64,000 nt of DNA, taken from the IMG/VR virus record IMGVR_UViG_3300044591_002232, positions 62,001 to 126,000 of that record. One strand, 5' to 3'. Positions 9,215 to 27,665 of the stretch are shown piece by piece (the first letter of the stretch is position 1; the number at the start of each line of letters is the position of its first letter). The notes beneath the pieces were generated by a model. That model made no database searches. It saw nothing but the letters and a program-made list of their open reading frames with translations, and was not told the DNA's origin. A program made the translations under genes and the position numbers.

Positions 9215-9418
9215 ATGGCACTTTCTCAAAACCGATTTGTTGATTTGGGTCAACAAATCTATCAACAAATGGTTAAAGAGTATCACGACCTCCTTCACCA
9301 CGATGATACTTATGGTGAACTTGTGGAAAATAGAACCACCTATCGAATGTTTGCTGAAATGTCCTTTGCGGCAGCAGAAGAGTTTGTAGAAGTATTCCGC
9401 AATCAAGAAGACAACTGA
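9215..9418 (+). CDS. Hypothetical protein
   Basis: Follows promoter 9135. Confidence 0.7.
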   Translation: MALSQNRFVDLGQQIYQQMVKEYHDLLHHDDTYGELVENRTTYRMFAEMSFAAAEEFVEVFRNQEDN

Positions 9419-9496
9419 AATGACCAAAACTTACAATTTTCAGGTTACTAAAGAACAACTTAAAGTAATTTCTACCTTTTATAACTAATTGAAATT

Positions 9497-9733
9497 ATGA
9501 CACTTTCTTACGATCTACTTCAACTTTCGTTTCAAAACAACTCAACTATCGAAAAAGTCAAAAAATCTCTTAGACTCGCCGCAGAAGATGGTCTTATTTC
9601 TTGTGAAATAGACAATATCGAACAGGAGGAGGTTAGTATTATTATTGCCTATTTGAAAGATGAGGGGATTAAATTGTGGAATTACAACAAATACACTAAA
9701 AGTATTTTTGTTTCATGGGTGACACCTGATTAA
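9497..9733 (+). CDS. Hypothetical protein (paralog of 7929-8156)
   Basis: See paralog. Confidence 0.75.
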   Translation: MTLSYDLLQLSFQNNSTIEKVKKSLRLAAEDGLISCEIDNIEQEEVSIIIAYLKDEGIKLWNYNKYTKSIFVSWVTPD

Positions 9734-9804
9734 CTGGCACAAGCACCCGACCAGACCCACTGATTCTGCTGTATTCTACATTTGTCGTTAAGGGAATTCA
9801 ACCC

Positions 9805-10566
9805 GTGAACCTGACTCTCAAGTTTTCTTTTGGCAACAACAAATTGGCCAATGATACTCTGATTTTCAATCTCCCGGCTGGCAAAACCTGTCCTGGCGCC
9901 GATAAATGCCTGGCTTTTGCTAAGGAAGTCGATGGTAAACGAATTCTAGTTAATGGCTCTCAAATGGAGTTTCGTTGTTTTGCTGCATGTTCTGAGGCCC
10001 AGTATCCGGCTGTTTATGATGCCCGTCAGCACAATTGGGAAACCGTAAAGAATCTTATTAAAACTTTTGGTGTAGGCAAGGCCGGTAAGATTGTGGCCGA
10101 TCAGATCCAGTCTGTTCGTAAAAAGTCTACTAAACTTGTTCGGGTCCACGGAAGCGGCGACCTGTATTCTGCTGATTATTTTGCAATGTGGATGCACGTC
10201 TGTCGCCTTATTCCCGATCTTACTTTTTATGCTTATTCTAAGAATCTTCCCATGATTCTTGAGTATGGAATGGATATGTTGCCCAAGAACTTCTATCTTA
10301 CTGCCTCTAAAGGTGGCAAGTTTGACTACCTTATTGATGAAGGATTCTTCCCACGTTATTCTGTTGTGGTCAAAAATGATGCCGAAGCAGAAGCAATGGG
10401 TCTGGAAGTTGATCATGATGATTCTCATTGCTACAAGCAAGATGGGCCATTTGCTCTACTTGTTCATGGTAATCAGCCTGCTGGTAGTGAATGGCGCGAG
10501 GCGATTAAAGAGCGTAAAATCAACAATCAATTCACTGGGTATAATAAAAAGAAAGCGGCTGTGTAA
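9805..10566 (+). CDS. GP88-like protein (radical-SAM-related fold)
   Basis: FNLPAGKTCPGA...CFA...VRVHGSGDLYS...FYAYSK pattern. Confidence 0.7.
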   Translation: MNLTLKFSFGNNKLANDTLIFNLPAGKTCPGADKCLAFAKEVDGKRILVNGSQMEFRCFAACSEAQYPAVYDARQHNWETVKNLIKTFGVGKAGKIVADQIQSVRKKSTKLVRVHGSGDLYSADYFAMWMHVCRLIPDLTFYAYSKNLPMILEYGMDMLPKNFYLTASKGGKFDYLIDEGFFPRYSVVVKNDAEAEAMGLEVDHDDSHCYKQDGPFALLVHGNQPAGSEWREAIKERKINNQFTGYNKKKAAV

Positions 10567-10571
10567 TACTC

Positions 10572-10598
10572 AAAAAGAGGGGTAAATCCCCTCTTTTT
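10572..10598. terminator. Bidirectional intrinsic terminator
   Basis: AAAAAGAGGGG-TAAAT-CCCCTCTTTTT. Confidence 0.85.
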
Positions 10599-10722
10599 AT
10601 TTAAATTTTATTTTAGATAAAATTCTGTGGTTTTTATGGTGTGAACATTTTCCGATTAATGTCATATGCATTGCCCGATGATCTAAACCATTATCTCTAC
10701 AAAATTCCCTTAAATTTATAAT
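10597..10722 (-). pseudogene. C-terminal remnant of a homing endonuclease (NUMOD1-like DNA-binding domain)
   Basis: IINLREFCRDNGLDHRAMHMTLIGKCSHHKNHRI...*, similar to the C-terminus of 27756-28949; no start codon. Confidence 0.55.
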
Positions 10723-10803
10723 GTGCCTTGAGATTCAATATATTTTCTAATTGTTTCTGTTGATACTTCTCCTTTTGTGGTGGTTTTCTTTGTTGTATTT
10801 CAT
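10716..10803 (-). pseudogene. tnpA: Internally deleted IS200/IS605 Y1 transposase
   Basis: MKYNKENHHK joined out of frame to GEVSTETIRKYIESQG, the Y1 C-terminal helix; divergent from tnpB. Confidence 0.65.
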
Positions 10804-10855
10804 TTTATCTTGAAGTATTTAATTTGCTAAATAATAGTAGGTAATCATTCATTTA

Positions 10856-12064
10856 ATGTTGGTCCAAAAATCGGTTAAACTTAGAATCTATCCAAATAAC
10901 AAACAAGATGTTATTCTTCTTGAAAAGCATTTTGGTTGCAGGAGATTCGTGTATAATCATTTTCTAGAAATATTTAATGAAAATTACCACCAGGGTAAAA
11001 AGAAGTTGTCCTATGTTGATGCCGCCAAGATTCTTGTTGACCTTAAAAAGTCAGAAGAAGCTCAATGGTTGAAAGAAGTTAATTCGCAATCTCTTCAGGC
11101 AACGCTTAAGGACTTAGATGGGGCTTTTGATAGGTTTGATAGGAAAATAACCGAGTTTCCTAATTATAAGACTAAAAGAAAATCCAGAGCATCATTTAAG
11201 GTCCCTCAGCATTTTGATATTGATTGGGAAAACAATCTTATTACTATCCCTAAATTTAAGACTCCATTTAAGTTTAGTGGAAAGTACAAGGGTGACCTGG
11301 TTAAAATTAATTCTGTTACTATTTCAAAAACTCCTTCTGGAAAGTATTATGCTTCCGTTCAAGGAGAATTTGATATTCAACCAAAACCACAAGTTGAAAA
11401 CTGTATCGGGATTGATTTGGGAATTAAGGATTTGGTCATTACTTCTAATGGCGAAGTTTTTCCAAACAAAAGATTCCTTAAGAGAAAATTAAAAACTCTT
11501 AAGTATATCCAGAGACAACATTCTAAAAAGAAAAGAAATTCAACAACAAGAGAACGATGGAGAAAAAAGTTAGCAATTCATTATGAAAAAGTAACTAATC
11601 AAAGATTAGATTATCTTCACCAAATTACTTCTCAACTCATTAACGAAAACCAAGTTATTTGTATTGAGAATTTGAACGTGAAAGGAATGGTCAAGAACCA
11701 TAAATTAGCCCAGGCCATTAGTGATGTTGCCTGGGGCACACTAGTTAGACTGTTAGAGTATAAATGTCAATGGAACTCAAGAGAACTTGTTGTTATCGAT
11801 AGATTCTATCCTTCAAGTAAAACTTGTAGTTCTTGCAGTCATTTGATGGCGGAAATGCCTCTAAATGTAAGAGAATGGACTTGTCCTTCTTGTGGAACGG
11901 TTCACGATAGAGACATCAATGCTGCCAAAAACATTCTAATTCAAGGATTAAATATTCTGTCTGGTTCAGGAACTGAGTCGGACATTAAACAAAAACAGCA
12001 GGAGGCGTCTTCAATAGAAGAGTCTGTGAATGCTGAAACCGCGATGTCTTCAGCTTCGCGGTAG
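10856..12064 (+). CDS. tnpB: RNA-guided endonuclease TnpB
   Basis: N-terminal HTH (LRIYPN...FGCRRFVYN), RuvC-I GIDLG, RuvC-II IENL, Zn finger CSSC/CPSC, RuvC-III DRDINAA. Confidence 0.95.
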   Translation: MLVQKSVKLRIYPNNKQDVILLEKHFGCRRFVYNHFLEIFNENYHQGKKKLSYVDAAKILVDLKKSEEAQWLKEVNSQSLQATLKDLDGAFDRFDRKITEFPNYKTKRKSRASFKVPQHFDIDWENNLITIPKFKTPFKFSGKYKGDLVKINSVTISKTPSGKYYASVQGEFDIQPKPQVENCIGIDLGIKDLVITSNGEVFPNKRFLKRKLKTLKYIQRQHSKKKRNSTTRERWRKKLAIHYEKVTNQRLDYLHQITSQLINENQVICIENLNVKGMVKNHKLAQAISDVAWGTLVRLLEYKCQWNSRELVVIDRFYPSSKTCSSCSHLMAEMPLNVREWTCPSCGTVHDRDINAAKNILIQGLNILSGSGTESDIKQKQQEASSIEESVNAETAMSSASR

Positions 12065-12088
12065 TTCATGATAAGGGTTGTTATGCCA
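11930..12088 (+). ncRNA. Putative TnpB omega/reRNA with guide from about 12069
   Basis: Expected position overlapping the tnpB 3' end; hairpins at 12008-12021 and 12038-12062; 5' boundary uncertain. Confidence 0.55.
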
Positions 12089-12636
12089 AATACGGTCCCG
12101 TGGCCATCCATTGGCGCAAGGTTTCCAATAAAGAACGGGGCACCGATTGGGATGGTTTTGTAAAACAAATTGCGAGGCTCCCTAAAAATCAACTTTGGCG
12201 TCATGGACAGGCCGGTGATCTACCCCATAATAATGGAAACATTGATTACATCAAACTCAAAAAGTTGATCACGGCCAATACAAATAAAAGGGGCTACACC
12301 TATACTCACCATATTCTCAACGAGCACAATCGCATCTGCATTGAGAACGCTAATGCAAGGGGTTTTGCAATCAATGCTTCTACTGAATCAGTAGAAGTTG
12401 CAGACAAGGTAATGTCCGAATATGGAATTCCGGCAGTTGCGGTTGTTCCTTCTGATAAGACCGAGAGGTTTTATCAAACAGAATCTGGCAGAAAAGTTAT
12501 TACCTGCCCGGCCACTATTCATGATAATGTGAATTGCGCTACGTGTGGTCTTTGTGCAGTCACTGATCGGGAGTTTATTATTGCCTTCCCGGCTCATTCT
12601 CCTGCCAAGAAAACAGTTAATGAGATTGTTGGGTGA
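12070..12636 (+). pseudogene. 5'-truncated GP88-related (DUF7227-like) gene
   Basis: Frame continues upstream of GTG 12100 as DKGCYAKYGP to the IS right end; the expected N-terminal Cys segment is absent; may still be translated from GTG 12100. Confidence 0.55.
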
Positions 12637-12638
12637 AA

Positions 12639-12911
12639 ATGACTATTTTTCATGGTGGATGTATTACCTGTGAAAGTCAGGAAATTTATGGCGAATCTAG
12701 GTGTAGTGGTTGTCAATATTTCGAGGATAATTGGAATTTACCGGATTTAGCATACAGGGATGGAGATCCTTTTTATAATTTTGTTGCCCCATCATCGACA
12801 TTTGATTTTTATACCTATCAAATGTTTCTAGATGTTGCTAGACCAGAAGAATTAGAGGGAGATTATTGTAGTTTTGATACTTATGATAAATTAGGTGTGA
12901 CACCTGAATAA
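12639..12911 (+). CDS. Hypothetical Cys-containing protein
   Basis: CITC...CSGC; C-terminal TPE* from the repeat. Confidence 0.6.
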   Translation: MTIFHGGCITCESQEIYGESRCSGCQYFEDNWNLPDLAYRDGDPFYNFVAPSSTFDFYTYQMFLDVARPEELEGDYCSFDTYDKLGVTPE

Positions 12912-12977
12912 CTGGCACAAGACCCACCACCACCAGACCATTCTAGCCTTACAATAATCACAGTTCAAAAAAACACC

Positions 12978-13490
12978 ATGTTTTCTTCTCTGATTCCTTT
13001 CTCTGGTTTTTATGGATCTATTCATAATTCCTACATGGATGATGTTCTTGAAATGCGAGAGGCCGAAGTAAGTGATTGGAGAAATGTATTTGAGGAATAT
13101 GCAAAAGAATATGTCAAAAAACTAGCCGAGTGGATGGATGTTTCTCTTGAATATGAAGAACTAATTTCACCCAAAGAATATAATTTTATGAATGATCGAA
13201 TCTTTGCAGAGATCAGCCGTTCTGATTTTGCCAAGATTTTGTGTGCCGTAAGAGGCACCACATTGAATAACAAGGTAAGGCAAATGTTCACTTCTCGTAG
13301 TGGATTTATTTCTCATTATCCCAATCGCATTTCAGAATGGGGTCGAATTTCCACCTGGGATCATAACCAGATTGGTGCTGTTCTTGCAGCCTATGTAGAC
13401 AAATACCGGGAATCTGACGATATTGAGGCAAACATTGCAGAATCCATTTATGAGGATGGAACTCTTGAATCTATTATGCTGGAGGGTTGA
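12978..13490 (+). CDS. Conserved phage hypothetical protein
   Basis: IPFSGFY...SPKEYNF...FTSRSGFIS. Confidence 0.75.
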   Translation: MFSSLIPFSGFYGSIHNSYMDDVLEMREAEVSDWRNVFEEYAKEYVKKLAEWMDVSLEYEELISPKEYNFMNDRIFAEISRSDFAKILCAVRGTTLNNKVRQMFTSRSGFISHYPNRISEWGRISTWDHNQIGAVLAAYVDKYRESDDIEANIAESIYEDGTLESIMLEG

Positions 13491-26289: not shown

Positions 26290-26672
26290 CGCGGCCTGGG
26301 CCTAATCCATAAGCCCCCATAAAAATCAAAGCCTTTTAATCCAAAAGTCAATATAGGGATACAATTAGGCCCCCTTATATAACCCGATAATTTTTCATAA
26401 AATACTTTCAACCAAAAATGACTTTTTATTTACAATATTATCAAAAAAATCGCAGGGGAGTTTTTTACGAAAATACCCCTTTAATAGAAATAAAAGGATA
26501 TAAGATAATAGAAAGAATATTATTAAAAAATTTAAACTAAACCCCCATTTTCCACCAAAAACCCGAATCAATTTCCCATAAACCAAAAAATTTCCGCCGG
26601 GTAAAAATCGTCATAAATAGTCGGCTCATAAAAATGACGCGAATTTAACTTAATTATTAGGAGAATATTAAA

Positions 26673-27665
26673 ATGCCACGAGGTTTCACAGTTAAATCAA
26701 AAAATACATCAGATAATCTTGATTTTCAGGATCTAGAAAATCATATCAAAAGACTTTCTGAAGAAATTCAAAAAAATTCGTCTAAACAAGAGTCGTTCTT
26801 ACCAGAACTACAACAATACCAGCAACAACTTAATGAATATTATAATAAAGTAAAAGCCAAGATGAGGGGTAAGAAAATCGTTTTCTGTCTTCCTGGAAGA
26901 TCTTGTTCTTATGCATTTCTAAAAAGTTTTGTTCAACTATGTTTTGATCTAGTGAACAATGGAATGGGAATTCAAATTTCTCAGGATTATTCTTCCATGG
27001 TGAACTTTGCAAGATGTAAGGTTCTTGGCGCGAATGTCACAAGTGGTCCCTGGCAAGAACCCTGGCAAGGAAAACTAGAATATGATTGGCAATTATGGAT
27101 CGATAATGACATTGTTTTTAATTCTGAAAAATTCTGGCAATTGTGTGATCTTGCCGTAAAGGACGTTCCTTCTGAAAAAGAATTTGATAAAGAAGAATAT
27201 CCTCTATGGGAAGTTTCTGATGAGGAACTTGAATCTATGCACAAGTCAGATTTTAATGTACGAAAAGAGCGGGTTCGGCGTTTGTCGAAATATGTGAATC
27301 CTATGGTGAGTGGCTGGTACAAAACTGAAGACGGACGGACTACCTCAGTGGCTCATTGGCTAGAAGCCGATGATTTTGTAAAAAACGGTGGCGTTATGAA
27401 TCATGAGACCGCCGAAAGTATTTCTAAGAGAAAGAAGCCTTTTTCTGTCGATTATGTTGGTGGTGGGTGGCTTATGATCTCTAAAGGAGTTTTTGAGAAT
27501 ATCAAATATCCTTGGTGGGGTCCTAAACTTCAAACTTTTGAGAATGGGATATCTGACTATGCAGGTGAGGACGTGTCACATGCGTTAGACGCAAAAGAAC
27601 TCGGTATTGAGATTCTAGTTGACCCTAGGATATGGGTAGGCCACGAAAAAATTAGAATTTTATAA
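26673..27665 (+). CDS. GT-A fold glycosyltransferase-like protein
   Basis: WIDNDIVF DxD motif, GGGWLMI, GEDV, VGHEK; late promoter TAAATA at 26614. Confidence 0.8.
   Translation: MPRGFTVKSKNTSDNLDFQDLENHIKRLSEEIQKNSSKQESFLPELQQYQQQLNEYYNKVKAKMRGKKIVFCLPGRSCSYAFLKSFVQLCFDLVNNGMGIQISQDYSSMVNFARCKVLGANVTSGPWQEPWQGKLEYDWQLWIDNDIVFNSEKFWQLCDLAVKDVPSEKEFDKEEYPLWEVSDEELESMHKSDFNVRKERVRRLSKYVNPMVSGWYKTEDGRTTSVAHWLEADDFVKNGGVMNHETAESISKRKKPFSVDYVGGGWLMISKGVFENIKYPWWGPKLQTFENGISDYAGEDVSHALDAKELGIEILVDPRIWVGHEKIRIL

What the first reader, a model, noticed from the sequence alone, without database searches (positions are those of the whole stretch)
10716..12068. Phage-adapted IS605: intact tnpB, internally deleted tnpA, both under T4-type late promoters
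Seen: TnpB keeps all three RuvC acidic residues and the Zn finger. The divergent tnpA is reduced to 88 bp (start MKYNKENHHK fused out of frame to GEVSTETIRKYIESQG), so the HUH motif is lost. The short spacer has TAAATA on both strands (10828-10833 plus; 10821-10816 minus). No left-end hairpin is evident. Inference: the element is immobile in cis while its RNA-guided nuclease is retained and timed to late infection, like a homing endonuclease.
Basis: partly seen in the sequence, partly recalled or inferred. Interest (0 to 1): 0.65.

Follow-up and report, generated by a model that had tools for sequence, protein, structure and literature searches.

The report
Cyanophage TnpB cassette spreading by recombination
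A lake-water T4-like cyanophage carries a crippled IS605 transposon that can no longer jump but keeps a working-looking RNA-guided nuclease behind a phage late-promoter motif, and the DNA around it shows it arrived by recombination, as a homing endonuclease gene would.

Summary
tnpB (10856-12064) is intact. Its RuvC D/E/D triad and four zinc-finger cysteines are conserved, and dN/dS is about 0.1. tnpA is an 88-bp remnant (10716-10803, minus strand) left by a roughly 309-bp internal deletion, shown by alignment to intact relatives. The left-end hairpin is gone, and the 250-kb genome has four tnpB genes but no tnpA.

tnpB sits 22 nt behind CTAAATA, the most enriched upstream 7-mer in this genome. 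The same motif precedes the portal, sheath, baseplate gp8 and scaffold genes. The minus-strand "late promoter" for the tnpA remnant is not supported.

New findings:
- The last ~116 nt (11954-12069) form an omega-RNA scaffold with 22 covarying pairs.
- The right end abuts codon 36 of a conserved DUF7227 gene, at CPFY|DKGCYAK.
- Sister phages have that gene intact, with the TAM TTTAT directly before a near-match to the guide.
- The gene's first 105 bp are replaced by a full-length GP88-family homolog plus the element.
- In a backbone over 99% identical to a sister phage, 10-14% divergence is confined to the ~300 bp left and ~200 bp right of the cassette, a co-conversion-like footprint.
- Cassette and empty alleles co-occur in one lake metagenome.

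Best reading: an RNA-guided, TnpA-independent homing cassette. Cleavage and late timing are untested.

The parts
9501..9804 (+). Left co-conversion-like tract: a 78-aa ORF (9497-9733) plus a repeated intergenic element (9717-9804). The tract ends at the start codon that belongs to DUF7227 in sister phages.
   Evidence: 32 mismatches in 304 bp against sister phage L007, versus 1 in the preceding 250 bp (Fisher p=3e-8). Homology to L006 and L007 stops at 9804.
9805..10566 (+). Intact GP88-family gene (253 aa), sitting exactly where the DUF7227 gene starts in sister phages. It is a distant homolog of the broken DUF7227.
   Evidence: Pfam GP88 at 162 bits, profile positions 3-226 of 230. The GP88 model and phrog_1392 also hit the intact DUF7227 of sister phages. 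Relatives L038 and L039 share only the coding part.
10572..10598 (+). Intrinsic-terminator-like hairpin after the GP88 gene.
   Evidence: 11-pair stem followed by a T run. The weak Rfam sraA hit is only this hairpin.
10599..10715 (.). Unique spacer where the IS605 left end should be. It has no LE hairpin and no TTTAT-LE junction.
   Evidence: No similarity to the LE of L032 or L150. The hairpin motif occurs only at the RE. The spacer has no other copy in the genome.
10716..10803 (-). tnpA remnant: 10 N-terminal codons joined out of frame to the last ~17 codons. About 309 bp are deleted, including the HUH motif.
   Evidence: translation; alignment to intact tnpA P0121 in L032. L044 and L045 show other, independent tnpA lesions.
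10827..10833 (+). CTAAATA, a T4-type late-promoter motif 22 nt before the tnpB start codon.
   Evidence: It is the top enriched 7-mer in the 60 nt upstream of ORFs genome-wide (28 of 283 upstream regions versus 1.9 expected). It precedes gp8, tail sheath, portal and scaffold genes and is conserved in relatives. CTAAATA is the reported late motif of the T4-like phage Aeh1 (PMC1524935).
10856..12064 (+). tnpB, an RNA-guided RuvC nuclease of 402 aa, intact.
   Evidence: dN/dS 0.09-0.12 against six relatives.
11954..12069 (+). Omega-RNA scaffold overlapping the tnpB 3' end and the right end (RE). It has four helices. The RE hairpin is at 12036-12061 and the RE ends ...GGTAGTTCAT at 12069.
   Evidence: 34 consensus pairs, 22 with compensatory changes; 96.2% of cells paired versus 31-41% when partners are slid; 0 of 500 shuffles reach the observed values. 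The window's own fold is -40.9 kcal/mol, z = -4.07. Nine independent elements diverge right after GTTCA(T).
12070..12089 (+). Predicted guide segment of the omega RNA, which is also the first bases of the DUF7227 remnant (GATAAGGGTTGTTATGCCAA).
   Evidence: Position directly 3' of the RE, as in characterised TnpB systems (established knowledge; PMC10055086). The empty site in L006 and L007 reads TTTAT|GATAAAGGTTGTTATGCAAAG, with 2 mismatches in 20.
12070..12636 (+). 3' remnant of the DUF7227 gene (codons ~36-223). Its first 105 bp, including the TCPTTCPFY motif and the TAM, are missing.
   Evidence: Pfam DUF7227 profile positions 33-221 only. The gene is intact (223-231 aa) in 21 related viral loci.
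12070..12264 (+). Right co-conversion-like tract.
   Evidence: 28 mismatches in the first 200 bp after the junction versus 18 in the next 657 bp. Nearly all are synonymous (Fisher p=2e-8).

Best explanation
This is a degenerate IS605-family element in a T4-like freshwater cyanomyovirus. It has lost the ability to transpose: tnpA is internally deleted, the left end is gone, and no TnpA is encoded anywhere in the genome. It keeps a complete TnpB plus omega-RNA module.

The proposed mechanism has five steps.
1. The phage's late transcription machinery reads tnpB from the CTAAATA motif.
2. The 3' end of that transcript becomes the omega RNA, whose guide is the 16-20 nt just beyond the right end. 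That sequence is codons 36-41 of a DUF7227 gene.
3. In a cell co-infected by a related phage with an intact DUF7227 gene, TnpB recognises TTTAT followed by the guide match and cuts.
4. The break is repaired by the phage's recombination system using the cassette-bearing genome as template.
5. The product replaces the 5' end of DUF7227 with [GP88-family homolog - terminator - tnpA remnant - tnpB], together with a few hundred bases of donor flank on each side.

The carrier genome is protected because TTCAT (the RE tip), not TTTAT, precedes the guide match. The intact GP88-family gene plausibly supplies the function lost with DUF7227.

Shown here: the anatomy, the target site and TAM, omega-RNA covariation, purifying selection, the late-gene motif, the recombinational origin of the cassette and its flanks, and co-occurrence of both alleles in one sample.

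Inferred: late transcription, omega-RNA processing, cleavage, that TnpB cleavage (rather than ordinary recombination) drove the exchange, and that GP88 compensates.
For: Anatomy.

No TnpA but four TnpB genes in the genome.

Right end and omega RNA: nine elements diverge after GTTCA(T). 22 of 34 pairs covary, with 0 of 500 shuffles reaching the observed values. The window's own fold has z = -4.07.

Selection: dN/dS is 0.09-0.12, including against L044, which also lacks a working tnpA.

Late motif:
- CTAAATA is the top upstream 7-mer and sits before gp8, sheath, portal and scaffold genes, typically 20-25 nt from the ATG.
- The motif is conserved in 9 of 11 close relatives. TATAAATA stands at the same place in more distant phage-borne copies and in a second tnpB of this genome.

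Target: the RE abuts CPFY|DKGCYAK of DUF7227. That gene is intact in 21 related loci, and the two closest sisters have TTTAT directly before a 20-mer with 2 mismatches to the guide.

TAM: TTTAT precedes the LE in three independent insertions, L032, L150 and L153.

Self-protection: the only perfect guide match in the genome follows GTTCAT.

Recombinational origin:
- The backbone is 99.2-99.9% identical to sister phage G002.
- Mismatches cluster in 9501-9804 and 12070-12264, directly beside the cassette.
- The two sisters, one of which serves as outgroup, both have the intact gene, so by parsimony this genome acquired the cassette.

Population data:
- One run has a 2404-bp contig identical to 9732-12135, and also an empty-site contig at about six-fold higher depth.
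- A soda-lake contig carries the same architecture at ~96% identity with no indel inside tnpB.

Precedents: TnpB-driven homing in bacteria (PMC10055086), TnpA-independent spread in plasmids and the concept of non-restorative homing into co-infecting phages (PMC13565253), and late-promoter-driven homing endonucleases with co-conversion in T4 (PMC2988022).
Against: - No RNA data exist for this DNA, so late expression and the omega RNA are predictions.
- No cleavage assay has been done.
- The guide differs from the sister-phage allele at guide position 6, inside the TAM-proximal stretch where characterised TnpBs tolerate mismatches poorly. Those particular alleles may therefore be poor targets.
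- The locus lies in a hyperplastic region where cassettes bounded by a repeated intergenic element are shuffled anyway. Ordinary homologous recombination could give the same flanking-divergence pattern without any TnpB cut.
- The direction of the exchange rests on parsimony over three genomes.
- The origin of the GP88-tnpB juxtaposition and the loss of the LE are not reconstructed. No locus with the primary insertion (DUF7227 5' part - TTTAT - LE) was found, and the junction pattern gave no hit in JGI metagenome contigs.
- Compensation by GP88 is only inferred from distant homology (27-31 bits).
Confidence: 0.6

Rival explanations
1. This is a passive relic. The IS605 copy landed in DUF7227, decayed, and is carried along. 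The cassette and its flanks moved between phages by the ordinary repeat-mediated module shuffling of the hyperplastic region, and TnpB played no part.
For: The region is mosaic in all three sister genomes, with cassette gains and losses bounded by a repeated ~38-88-bp intergenic element. tnpA decay and solo tnpB are common: only 27 of 80 viral tnpB loci have any TnpA-like neighbour. No expression or cleavage data exist.
Against: tnpB shows dN/dS of ~0.1 even between copies that both lack tnpA. The omega-RNA helices are kept by compensatory changes in solo copies. A late-gene motif is conserved at a fixed distance. The right breakpoint of the divergent tract starts exactly at the RE junction rather than at a repeat.
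Confidence: 0.2
2. This is a competition weapon rather than a homing device. TnpB with its fixed guide cuts the DUF7227 gene of co-infecting relatives to exclude them. The payoff is killing rivals, not copying the cassette.
For: The target is the most conserved motif of a gene present across many related phages. The carrier is immune and has a substitute GP88-family gene. The empty allele co-occurs in the same sample. Killing of divergent competitors by homing endonucleases is a recognised outcome (PMC13565253).
Against: The flanking co-conversion-like tracts show that the cassette was in fact copied into a closely related backbone. Most alleles in more distant relatives have 3-7 mismatches to the guide, and many have TAC instead of TAT in the TAM position.
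Confidence: 0.15
3. TnpB has been domesticated as a nuclease-independent RNA-guided regulator (TldR-like) of the downstream DUF7227 remnant or of host genes.
For: Phage-encoded TnpB derivatives that act as transcription factors exist (10.1101/2023.11.30.569447).
Against: The RuvC D/E/D triad and the zinc finger are intact and invariant. The protein is full length. The guide matches only the adjacent remnant in this genome.
Confidence: 0.03

Closest known systems
IS605 / ISDra2-type IS200/IS605 elements with TnpB and omega RNA (Karvelis 2021; Meers 2023, PMC10055086)
   Same: Divergent tnpA/tnpB layout in intact relatives. Y1 transposase. Subterminal hairpins shared by LE and RE. Insertion 3' of a pentanucleotide (TTTAT here, TTGAT in ISDra2). 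TnpB with a RuvC triad and zinc finger (E=1e-62 to ISDra2 TnpB). Omega-RNA scaffold overlapping the tnpB 3' end, with the guide taken from the flank.
   Different: tnpA is internally deleted, the LE is absent and no TnpA is in the genome, so peel-and-paste transposition and restorative homing are both impossible. Transcription appears rewired to a T4-type late promoter. The host replicon is a lytic phage.
Free-standing and intron-encoded homing endonucleases of T4-like phages (SegF, SegG, I-TevI; intronless homing and marker exclusion; PMC2988022)
   Same: A nuclease gene lodged in or next to a conserved phage gene. Late-promoter motif directly upstream, as for I-TevI. The target is the allele lacking the gene in a related phage. 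The carrier is immune through sequence difference at the site. Flanking co-conversion tracts. SegF homing likewise swaps in neighbouring genes.
   Different: Recognition would be by a guide RNA plus a 5-nt TAM instead of by protein. The nuclease is a RuvC-type TnpB, not GIY-YIG or HNH. The interrupted gene is not restored by splicing but is accompanied by a distant homolog.
Transposon non-restorative homing (concept in PMC13565253; TnpA-independent spread of IS605 in a plasmid population cited there)
   Same: TnpB cuts the orthologous empty site on another replicon, and the element is copied by recombination without TnpA.
   Different: That paper treats co-infecting phages as a theoretical case. 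Here there is a natural phage locus with the expected footprint, but no experiment.
Solo tnpB (IS1341-like) copies and phage-borne tnpB annotated as 'transposase'
   Same: tnpB without tnpA is common. tblastn finds tnpB homologs in 613 GenBank phage records and in at least 393 IMG/VR stretches.
   Different: Those are below 60% identity and are not described with a defined target, TAM, promoter class or recombination footprint.

Membership tests
IS200/IS605 family (IS605 group) | Y1 (HUH) transposase TnpA | tested here: not met
   Only an 88-bp remnant aligns to TnpA residues 1-10 and 111-126 of an intact relative, and the HUH region is deleted. There is no Y1_Tnp match anywhere in the genome. 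The ancestry is clear, but the function is lost.
IS200/IS605 family (IS605 group) | TnpB with RuvC D/E/D triad and zinc finger | tested here: met
   Pfam domains. Invariant D187, E271, D353 and C324, C327, C343, C346. ISDra2 TnpB at E=1e-62.
IS200/IS605 family (IS605 group) | Subterminal hairpins at both the left and the right end | tested here: not met
   The RE hairpin is present at 12036-12061 with covariation. The LE hairpin is absent from the window.
IS200/IS605 family (IS605 group) | Insertion 3' of a specific 4-5-nt site, without target duplication | tested here: met
   TTTAT precedes the LE in L032, L150 and L153. TTTAT ends the 5' side of the empty site in L006 and L007. No duplication is seen at the RE side.
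TnpB-omega RNA (OMEGA) system | Structured RNA scaffold overlapping the tnpB 3' end and RE, followed by a flank-derived guide | tested here: met
   Four helices, 22 of 34 pairs with compensatory changes, and controls passed. This is in-silico evidence only. No Rfam family matched.
TnpB-omega RNA (OMEGA) system | TAM-dependent, guide-dependent DNA cleavage | not testable with these tools
   This needs a biochemical or plasmid-interference assay.
Homing endonuclease gene of T4-like phages (intronless homing) | A cognate target exists in alleles lacking the gene, and the carrier allele is immune | tested here: met
   The empty site reads TTTAT plus a 20-mer with 2 mismatches to the guide in sister phages. 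The carrier has TTCAT at the TAM position and no other TTTAT-guide site. Whether the mismatch at guide position 6 blocks cutting is unknown.
Homing endonuclease gene of T4-like phages (intronless homing) | Co-conversion of flanking markers | tested here: met
   Mismatches cluster in the ~300 bp left and ~200 bp right of the cassette, within a backbone over 99% identical. This is a footprint, not an observed event.
Homing endonuclease gene of T4-like phages (intronless homing) | Nuclease-dependent biased inheritance in mixed infection | not testable with these tools
   This needs phage crosses.
T4-type late gene | Late-promoter motif (TATAAATA / NATAAATA / CTAAATA) at the usual distance upstream | tested here: met
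   CTAAATA stands 22 nt before the ATG. It is the same motif and spacing as before the gp8, sheath, portal and scaffold genes. Literature: PMC1524935, PMC2984593.
T4-type late gene | Transcription late in infection, dependent on gp55 and gp33 | not tested
   No RNA run holds this DNA. The presence of g55 and g33 in this genome was not checked.

The most novel reading that the evidence does not exclude
A clade of IS605 elements has switched lifestyle inside T4-like cyanophages. It gave up TnpA-based transposition, and its TnpB-omega RNA now works as an RNA-guided intronless-homing (marker-exclusion) cassette driven by the phage late promoter. This copy targets the most conserved motif of a DUF7227 gene. 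It travels together with a cleavage-proof distant homolog (GP88 family) that replaces the destroyed gene, so each homing event swaps one gene version for another plus the nuclease.
Probability: 0.35. Interest if true: 0.85.

Novelty: new variant of a known kind. Interest (0 to 1): 0.7.

Why it matters
TnpB is the ancestor of Cas12. Its known natural role is to keep its transposon in place in bacterial chromosomes. Whether it also drives horizontal spread between co-infecting viruses has so far been argued only in theory.

This locus gives a concrete and testable natural case:
- a defined guide;
- a defined TAM (TTTAT);
- a defined target gene, with empty alleles available in sister phages;
- a late-promoter motif;
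- a recombination footprint.

If confirmed, RNA-guided nucleases would join protein-only homing endonucleases as shapers of T4-like phage genomes and of marker exclusion in nature. It would also show an intermediate on the road from transposon accessory gene to host-integrated (here virus-integrated) RNA-guided system. In addition it offers a compact 402-aa TnpB with a well-supported omega-RNA structure and TAM for characterisation.

Tried and rejected
- Megablast of 9500-13000 against GenBank phages gave no match.
- Rfam at a permissive threshold gave only a sub-threshold sraA hit, which is the GP88 terminator. No omega-RNA family matched.
- Single-protein peptide patterns for TnpB in IMG/VR gave only three fragmentary hits. 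An RE-core DNA pattern gave three loci. The alignment-based search was needed.
- The RE-DUF7227 junction pattern had no match in JGI metagenome contigs. No second backbone and no primary insertion with an LE could be fetched as DNA.
- The LE pattern search gave one locus, a miniature LE-RE element.
- L045 was unusable for defining the LE boundary, because its tnpA 3' region is rearranged.
- I tried to obtain a second presence/absence example from another tnpB of this genome (G000 26449-27582) against sister G001. That locus is too mosaic to define an empty site.
- No RNA run holds the stretch, so expression could not be examined.
- Reading DUF7227 as fused to TnpB is rejected: the two are in different frames (sequence).
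- I first considered GP88 as cargo inside the IS. I found no LE or TTTAT junction upstream of it, and relatives share only its coding region.
- A pseudoknot between GCTGAA and the terminal-loop TTCAGC was noticed but not tested.
Full report
CONTEXT. The window is bases 62001-126000 of a 249,820-bp IMG/VR virus record with direct terminal repeats and 37% G+C. The virus is a T4-like cyanomyovirus. It encodes a T4-type portal, tail sheath, gp8 and capsid scaffold. Its portal protein is 82% identical to that of Synechococcus phages B3 and B23. The stretch under study is held by 20 lake-water metagenome runs from 19 studies. None is RNA.

CHECK OF THE OBSERVATION. The ORF at 10856-12064 (+) encodes a 402-aa TnpB with the HTH_OrfB_IS605, OrfB_IS605 and Cas12f1-like TNB domains. 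It matches the solved ISDra2 TnpB at E=1e-62 over residues 3-365. In an alignment with 29 relatives of 57-96% identity, the RuvC residues D187, E271 and D353 and the four zinc-finger cysteines C324, C327, C343 and C346 are invariant.

On the minus strand, 10803..10716 reads MKYNKENHHK and then, one base out of frame, GEVSTETIRKYIESQGTL*. An intact IS605-type relative was recovered from a phage contig. In L032, tnpA is 126 aa and divergent from a tnpB that is 86% identical to this one. Window 10726-10763 aligns to the last codons of that tnpA, and window 10774-12069 to its first codons, the spacer, tnpB and the right end. About 309 bp of tnpA, including the HUH histidines, are therefore missing.

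Contigs from independent lake samples carry exactly this deletion, so it is not an assembly artefact. The hairpin motif that intact relatives have at both ends occurs only once in the 64-kb window, at the right end. The sequence left of the tnpA remnant has no similarity to the left ends of L032 or L150. One small correction applies: the element ends at 12069.

THE RIGHT END AND THE OMEGA RNA. Nine independent copies share ...GGTAGTTCA(T) and diverge immediately afterwards. That fixes the right end at 12069.

The last ~116 nt (11954-12069) align across 17 phage-borne relatives into four helices. Of 34 consensus pairs, 22 show compensatory double changes, and 96.2% of cells are paired against 31-41% when the 3' partners are slid by 1-3 columns. 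None of 500 shuffles reaches the observed values. The window's own sequence folds into this consensus at -40.9 kcal/mol, with z = -4.07.

This is the expected architecture of a TnpB omega RNA, with a scaffold overlapping the 3' end of tnpB and the guide taken from the flank. The structure is maintained in copies that have no tnpA. That argues for an RNA function rather than for TnpA recognition of the DNA hairpin. No Rfam family matched.

TnpB itself is under purifying selection. dN/dS is 0.09-0.12 against six relatives, including 0.11 against L044, a 95%-identical copy whose tnpA is truncated by a different lesion.

THE PROMOTER CLAIM. I tested the motif on the genome itself. CTAAATA is the most enriched 7-mer in the 60 nt upstream of ORFs of 80 aa or more. 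It occurs in 28 of 283 upstream regions against 1.9 expected, and there are only 61 copies on both strands of the genome. It usually lies 20-25 nt before the start codon, and it precedes the gp8, tail sheath, portal and scaffold genes.

CTAAATA is the published late-promoter motif of the T4-like phage Aeh1, and NATAAATA that of cyanophage S-PM2 (PMC1524935, PMC2984593). tnpB has CTAAATA at 10827-10833, 22 nt before its ATG. The motif stands at 20-22 nt in 9 of 11 close relatives, whether or not they have tnpA. More distant phage-borne copies (L057-L059) and a second tnpB of this genome have the canonical TATAAATA instead, and a third tnpB has CTAAATA. The late-promoter reading for tnpB is thus well supported in silico.

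The minus-strand TAAATA is TTAAATA. It is shared only with the closest relatives (L044, L045, L144), none of which has a working tnpA, and it reads TTGAATA in relatives with an intact tnpA. It also precedes a dead frame. That half of the claim is not supported.

WHAT THE ELEMENT SITS IN. The frame running out of the right end is a DUF7227 gene that lacks its first ~35 codons (Pfam profile positions 33-221). Twenty-one related viral loci have the gene intact.

In the two closest sister phages (L006/G001 and L007/G002) the intact gene reads ...CPFY|DKGCYAK..., and the DNA at the empty site is TTTAT|GATAAAGGTTGTTATGCAAAG. The window has ...GGTAGTTCAT|GATAAGGGTTGTTATGCCAAA. The element therefore inserted 3' of TTTAT, in the most conserved motif of the gene.

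TTTAT also precedes the left end in three independent insertions: L032, L150 and the miniature element L153. That makes TTTAT the likely target-adjacent motif. The predicted guide matches the sister allele with 2 mismatches in 20, at positions 6 and 18. In the carrier genome the only perfect guide match follows TTCAT, not TTTAT. This is how IS200/IS605 elements normally avoid cutting themselves.

THE UNIT THAT DIFFERS FROM THE SISTER PHAGES. Relative to L006 and L007, window 9805-12069 replaces just 105 bp, the 5' end of DUF7227. The replacement consists of:
- a full-length GP88-family gene (9805-10566), starting exactly where DUF7227 starts in the sisters, behind the same ribosome-binding context;
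- a terminator-like hairpin (10572-10598);
- a unique 117-bp spacer;
- the tnpA remnant;
- tnpB.

The Pfam GP88 model and phrog_1392 both hit the intact DUF7227 proteins (27-31 bits, above the curated cut-off). The two genes are therefore distant homologs. The sisters' records are only 56% and 68% complete; in them the only match to the GP88 model is the DUF7227 gene itself, and they lack this tnpB copy, though they share two of the genome's other tnpB-like genes.

RECOMBINATION FOOTPRINT. The backbone of this genome is 99.2-99.9% identical to G002 and 98.4-99.6% identical to G001 over many kilobases.

Against L007, the 250 bp at 9251-9500 have 1 mismatch, while the 304 bp at 9501-9804, directly left of the cassette, have 32. 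On the right, the first 200 bp after the junction have 28 mismatches, almost all synonymous, and the next 657 bp have 18. Both contrasts are highly significant (Fisher p of about 3e-8 and 2e-8).

The cassette therefore came with ~300 bp and ~200 bp of flank from a donor that was 10-14% diverged, into a backbone like that of the sisters. Both sisters, one of which acts as outgroup to the other and this genome, have the intact gene, so parsimony says this genome is the recipient. This is the pattern left by double-strand-break repair with co-conversion, as described for T4 homing endonucleases (PMC2988022).

It also means that the LE-less, GP88-linked form already existed in the donor. A soda-lake contig agrees with this: it carries the same architecture over 10515-12636 at ~96% identity, with a single 1-bp gap that lies in the spacer. 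In another run, a 2404-bp contig identical to 9732-12135 co-occurs with an empty-site contig whose loose end reads ...CCCCACAACCTGTCCTTTTT before 12068. The empty-site contig has roughly six-fold higher depth. Carrier and target alleles therefore meet in nature.

HOW IT MOST LIKELY WORKS. The element cannot transpose. It has no TnpA in cis or elsewhere in the phage and no left end, so even a host TnpA could not mobilise it.

The following steps are inferred:
1. The late promoter drives tnpB.
2. TnpB processes the 3' end of its own transcript into the omega RNA, as is established for ISDra2.
3. In mixed infection the complex cuts TTTAT-guide sites in intact DUF7227 genes.
4. The highly active late recombination machinery of a T4-like phage repairs the break from the carrier genome, copying GP88, tnpB and some flank.

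This is the non-restorative homing outlined theoretically in PMC13565253. It is the RNA-guided counterpart of the intronless homing of SegF and SegG.

THE MAIN RIVAL AND OTHER READINGS. The main rival is that ordinary repeat-mediated shuffling moved the cassette. The region is hyperplastic and carries about ten copies of a repeated intergenic element. The position-6 guide mismatch may also make the sampled sister alleles poor substrates. I put the homing reading at about 0.6, the passive reading at 0.2 and a pure competition-weapon reading at 0.15. A TldR-like regulator is unlikely because the catalytic residues are intact.

COMPARISON AND NOVELTY. By ancestry this is an IS605-group element, but it fails two defining features: a functional TnpA and a left end. 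It works, if at all, like a homing endonuclease gene.

Phage-borne tnpB as such is not new. There are 613 GenBank phage records with hits below 60% identity and at least 393 IMG/VR stretches, and only 27 of the 80 loci fetched had any TnpA-like neighbour. TnpB-driven homing is established in bacteria (PMC10055086).

In the paper library I found no report of the following:
- tnpB under T4-type late promoters;
- a defined phage target gene and TAM;
- a natural co-conversion footprint;
- a linked substitute homolog.

I therefore class this as a new variant of a known kind.

LIMITS. Everything about expression, RNA processing, cleavage and inheritance bias is inference. The primary insertion state, the donor genome and the step that joined GP88 to the element were not found.

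Noticed in passing
G000:C1 20924-22411 (+), 26449-27582 (-), 29677-30876 (-); locus L055: The genome has three more full-length TnpB-like genes (495, 377 and 399 aa; 24-45% identical to the one in the window) and no TnpA at all. The second has TATAAATA and the third CTAAATA about 24-25 nt before the ATG. The sister phages share the third (both) and the first (G001; not seen in the incomplete G002 record), but not the second.
   Followed up: partly
window 9717-9804, with further copies at window 7238, 8153, 9135, 12897 and 16868, and outside the window at G000 31095-59169: A repeated intergenic element has about ten copies (core ~38 bp, GTGACACCTGAYTAACTGGCACAAGCACCCGACCAGACC). It stands in front of small ORFs and marks the borders of cassettes that differ between sister phages. 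This is reminiscent of the promoter-stem-loop modules that shuffle genes in T4-type hyperplastic regions.
   Followed up: partly
L153:16-67 (minus strand): This is a miniature element. TTTAT is followed by the first ~41 nt of the left end, including the hairpin, fused directly to the right-end tail TAGTTCAT. It is about 49 nt in all, a PATE/MITE-like derivative of the same IS605 clade.
   Followed up: no
window 9805-10566 versus L006:3899-4570: The GP88-family protein and DUF7227 share the motif D-x-x-CY-x-x-x-GP, but at opposite ends (residues 206-218 versus 36-48). Both also have a TCP motif near the N-terminus. This suggests a rearranged or circularly permuted relationship within one superfamily of unknown function.
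   Followed up: no
window 12633-12911: A cysteine-rich 92-aa ORF (phrog_29620) is present here and in sister L007 but absent from sister L006. L007 has a further ~0.9 kb at this point. This is another cassette polymorphism, bounded by the intergenic repeat.
   Followed up: no
L044:89-178, L045:99-467, and L030, L035, L046, L056: tnpA is lost repeatedly and independently in this clade: truncated after 29 codons (L044), frameshifted (L045), or removed entirely up to within 0-15 nt of its start codon (L030, L046). tnpB, its upstream motif and the right end stay intact throughout.
   Followed up: partly
window 9719 joined to 12035 on opposite strands, in run X5: One metagenome contig (depth ~43) joins the intergenic repeat to the right-end hairpin region in inverted orientation. 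It may be another tnpB copy next to a repeat in a different genome.
   Followed up: no
window 12031-12036 and 12050-12055: GCTGAA just before the terminal hairpin is complementary to TTCAGC in that hairpin's loop. In relatives the loop reads TTTAGC, which would pair with a G-U wobble. This is a possible pseudoknot in the omega RNA.
   Followed up: no
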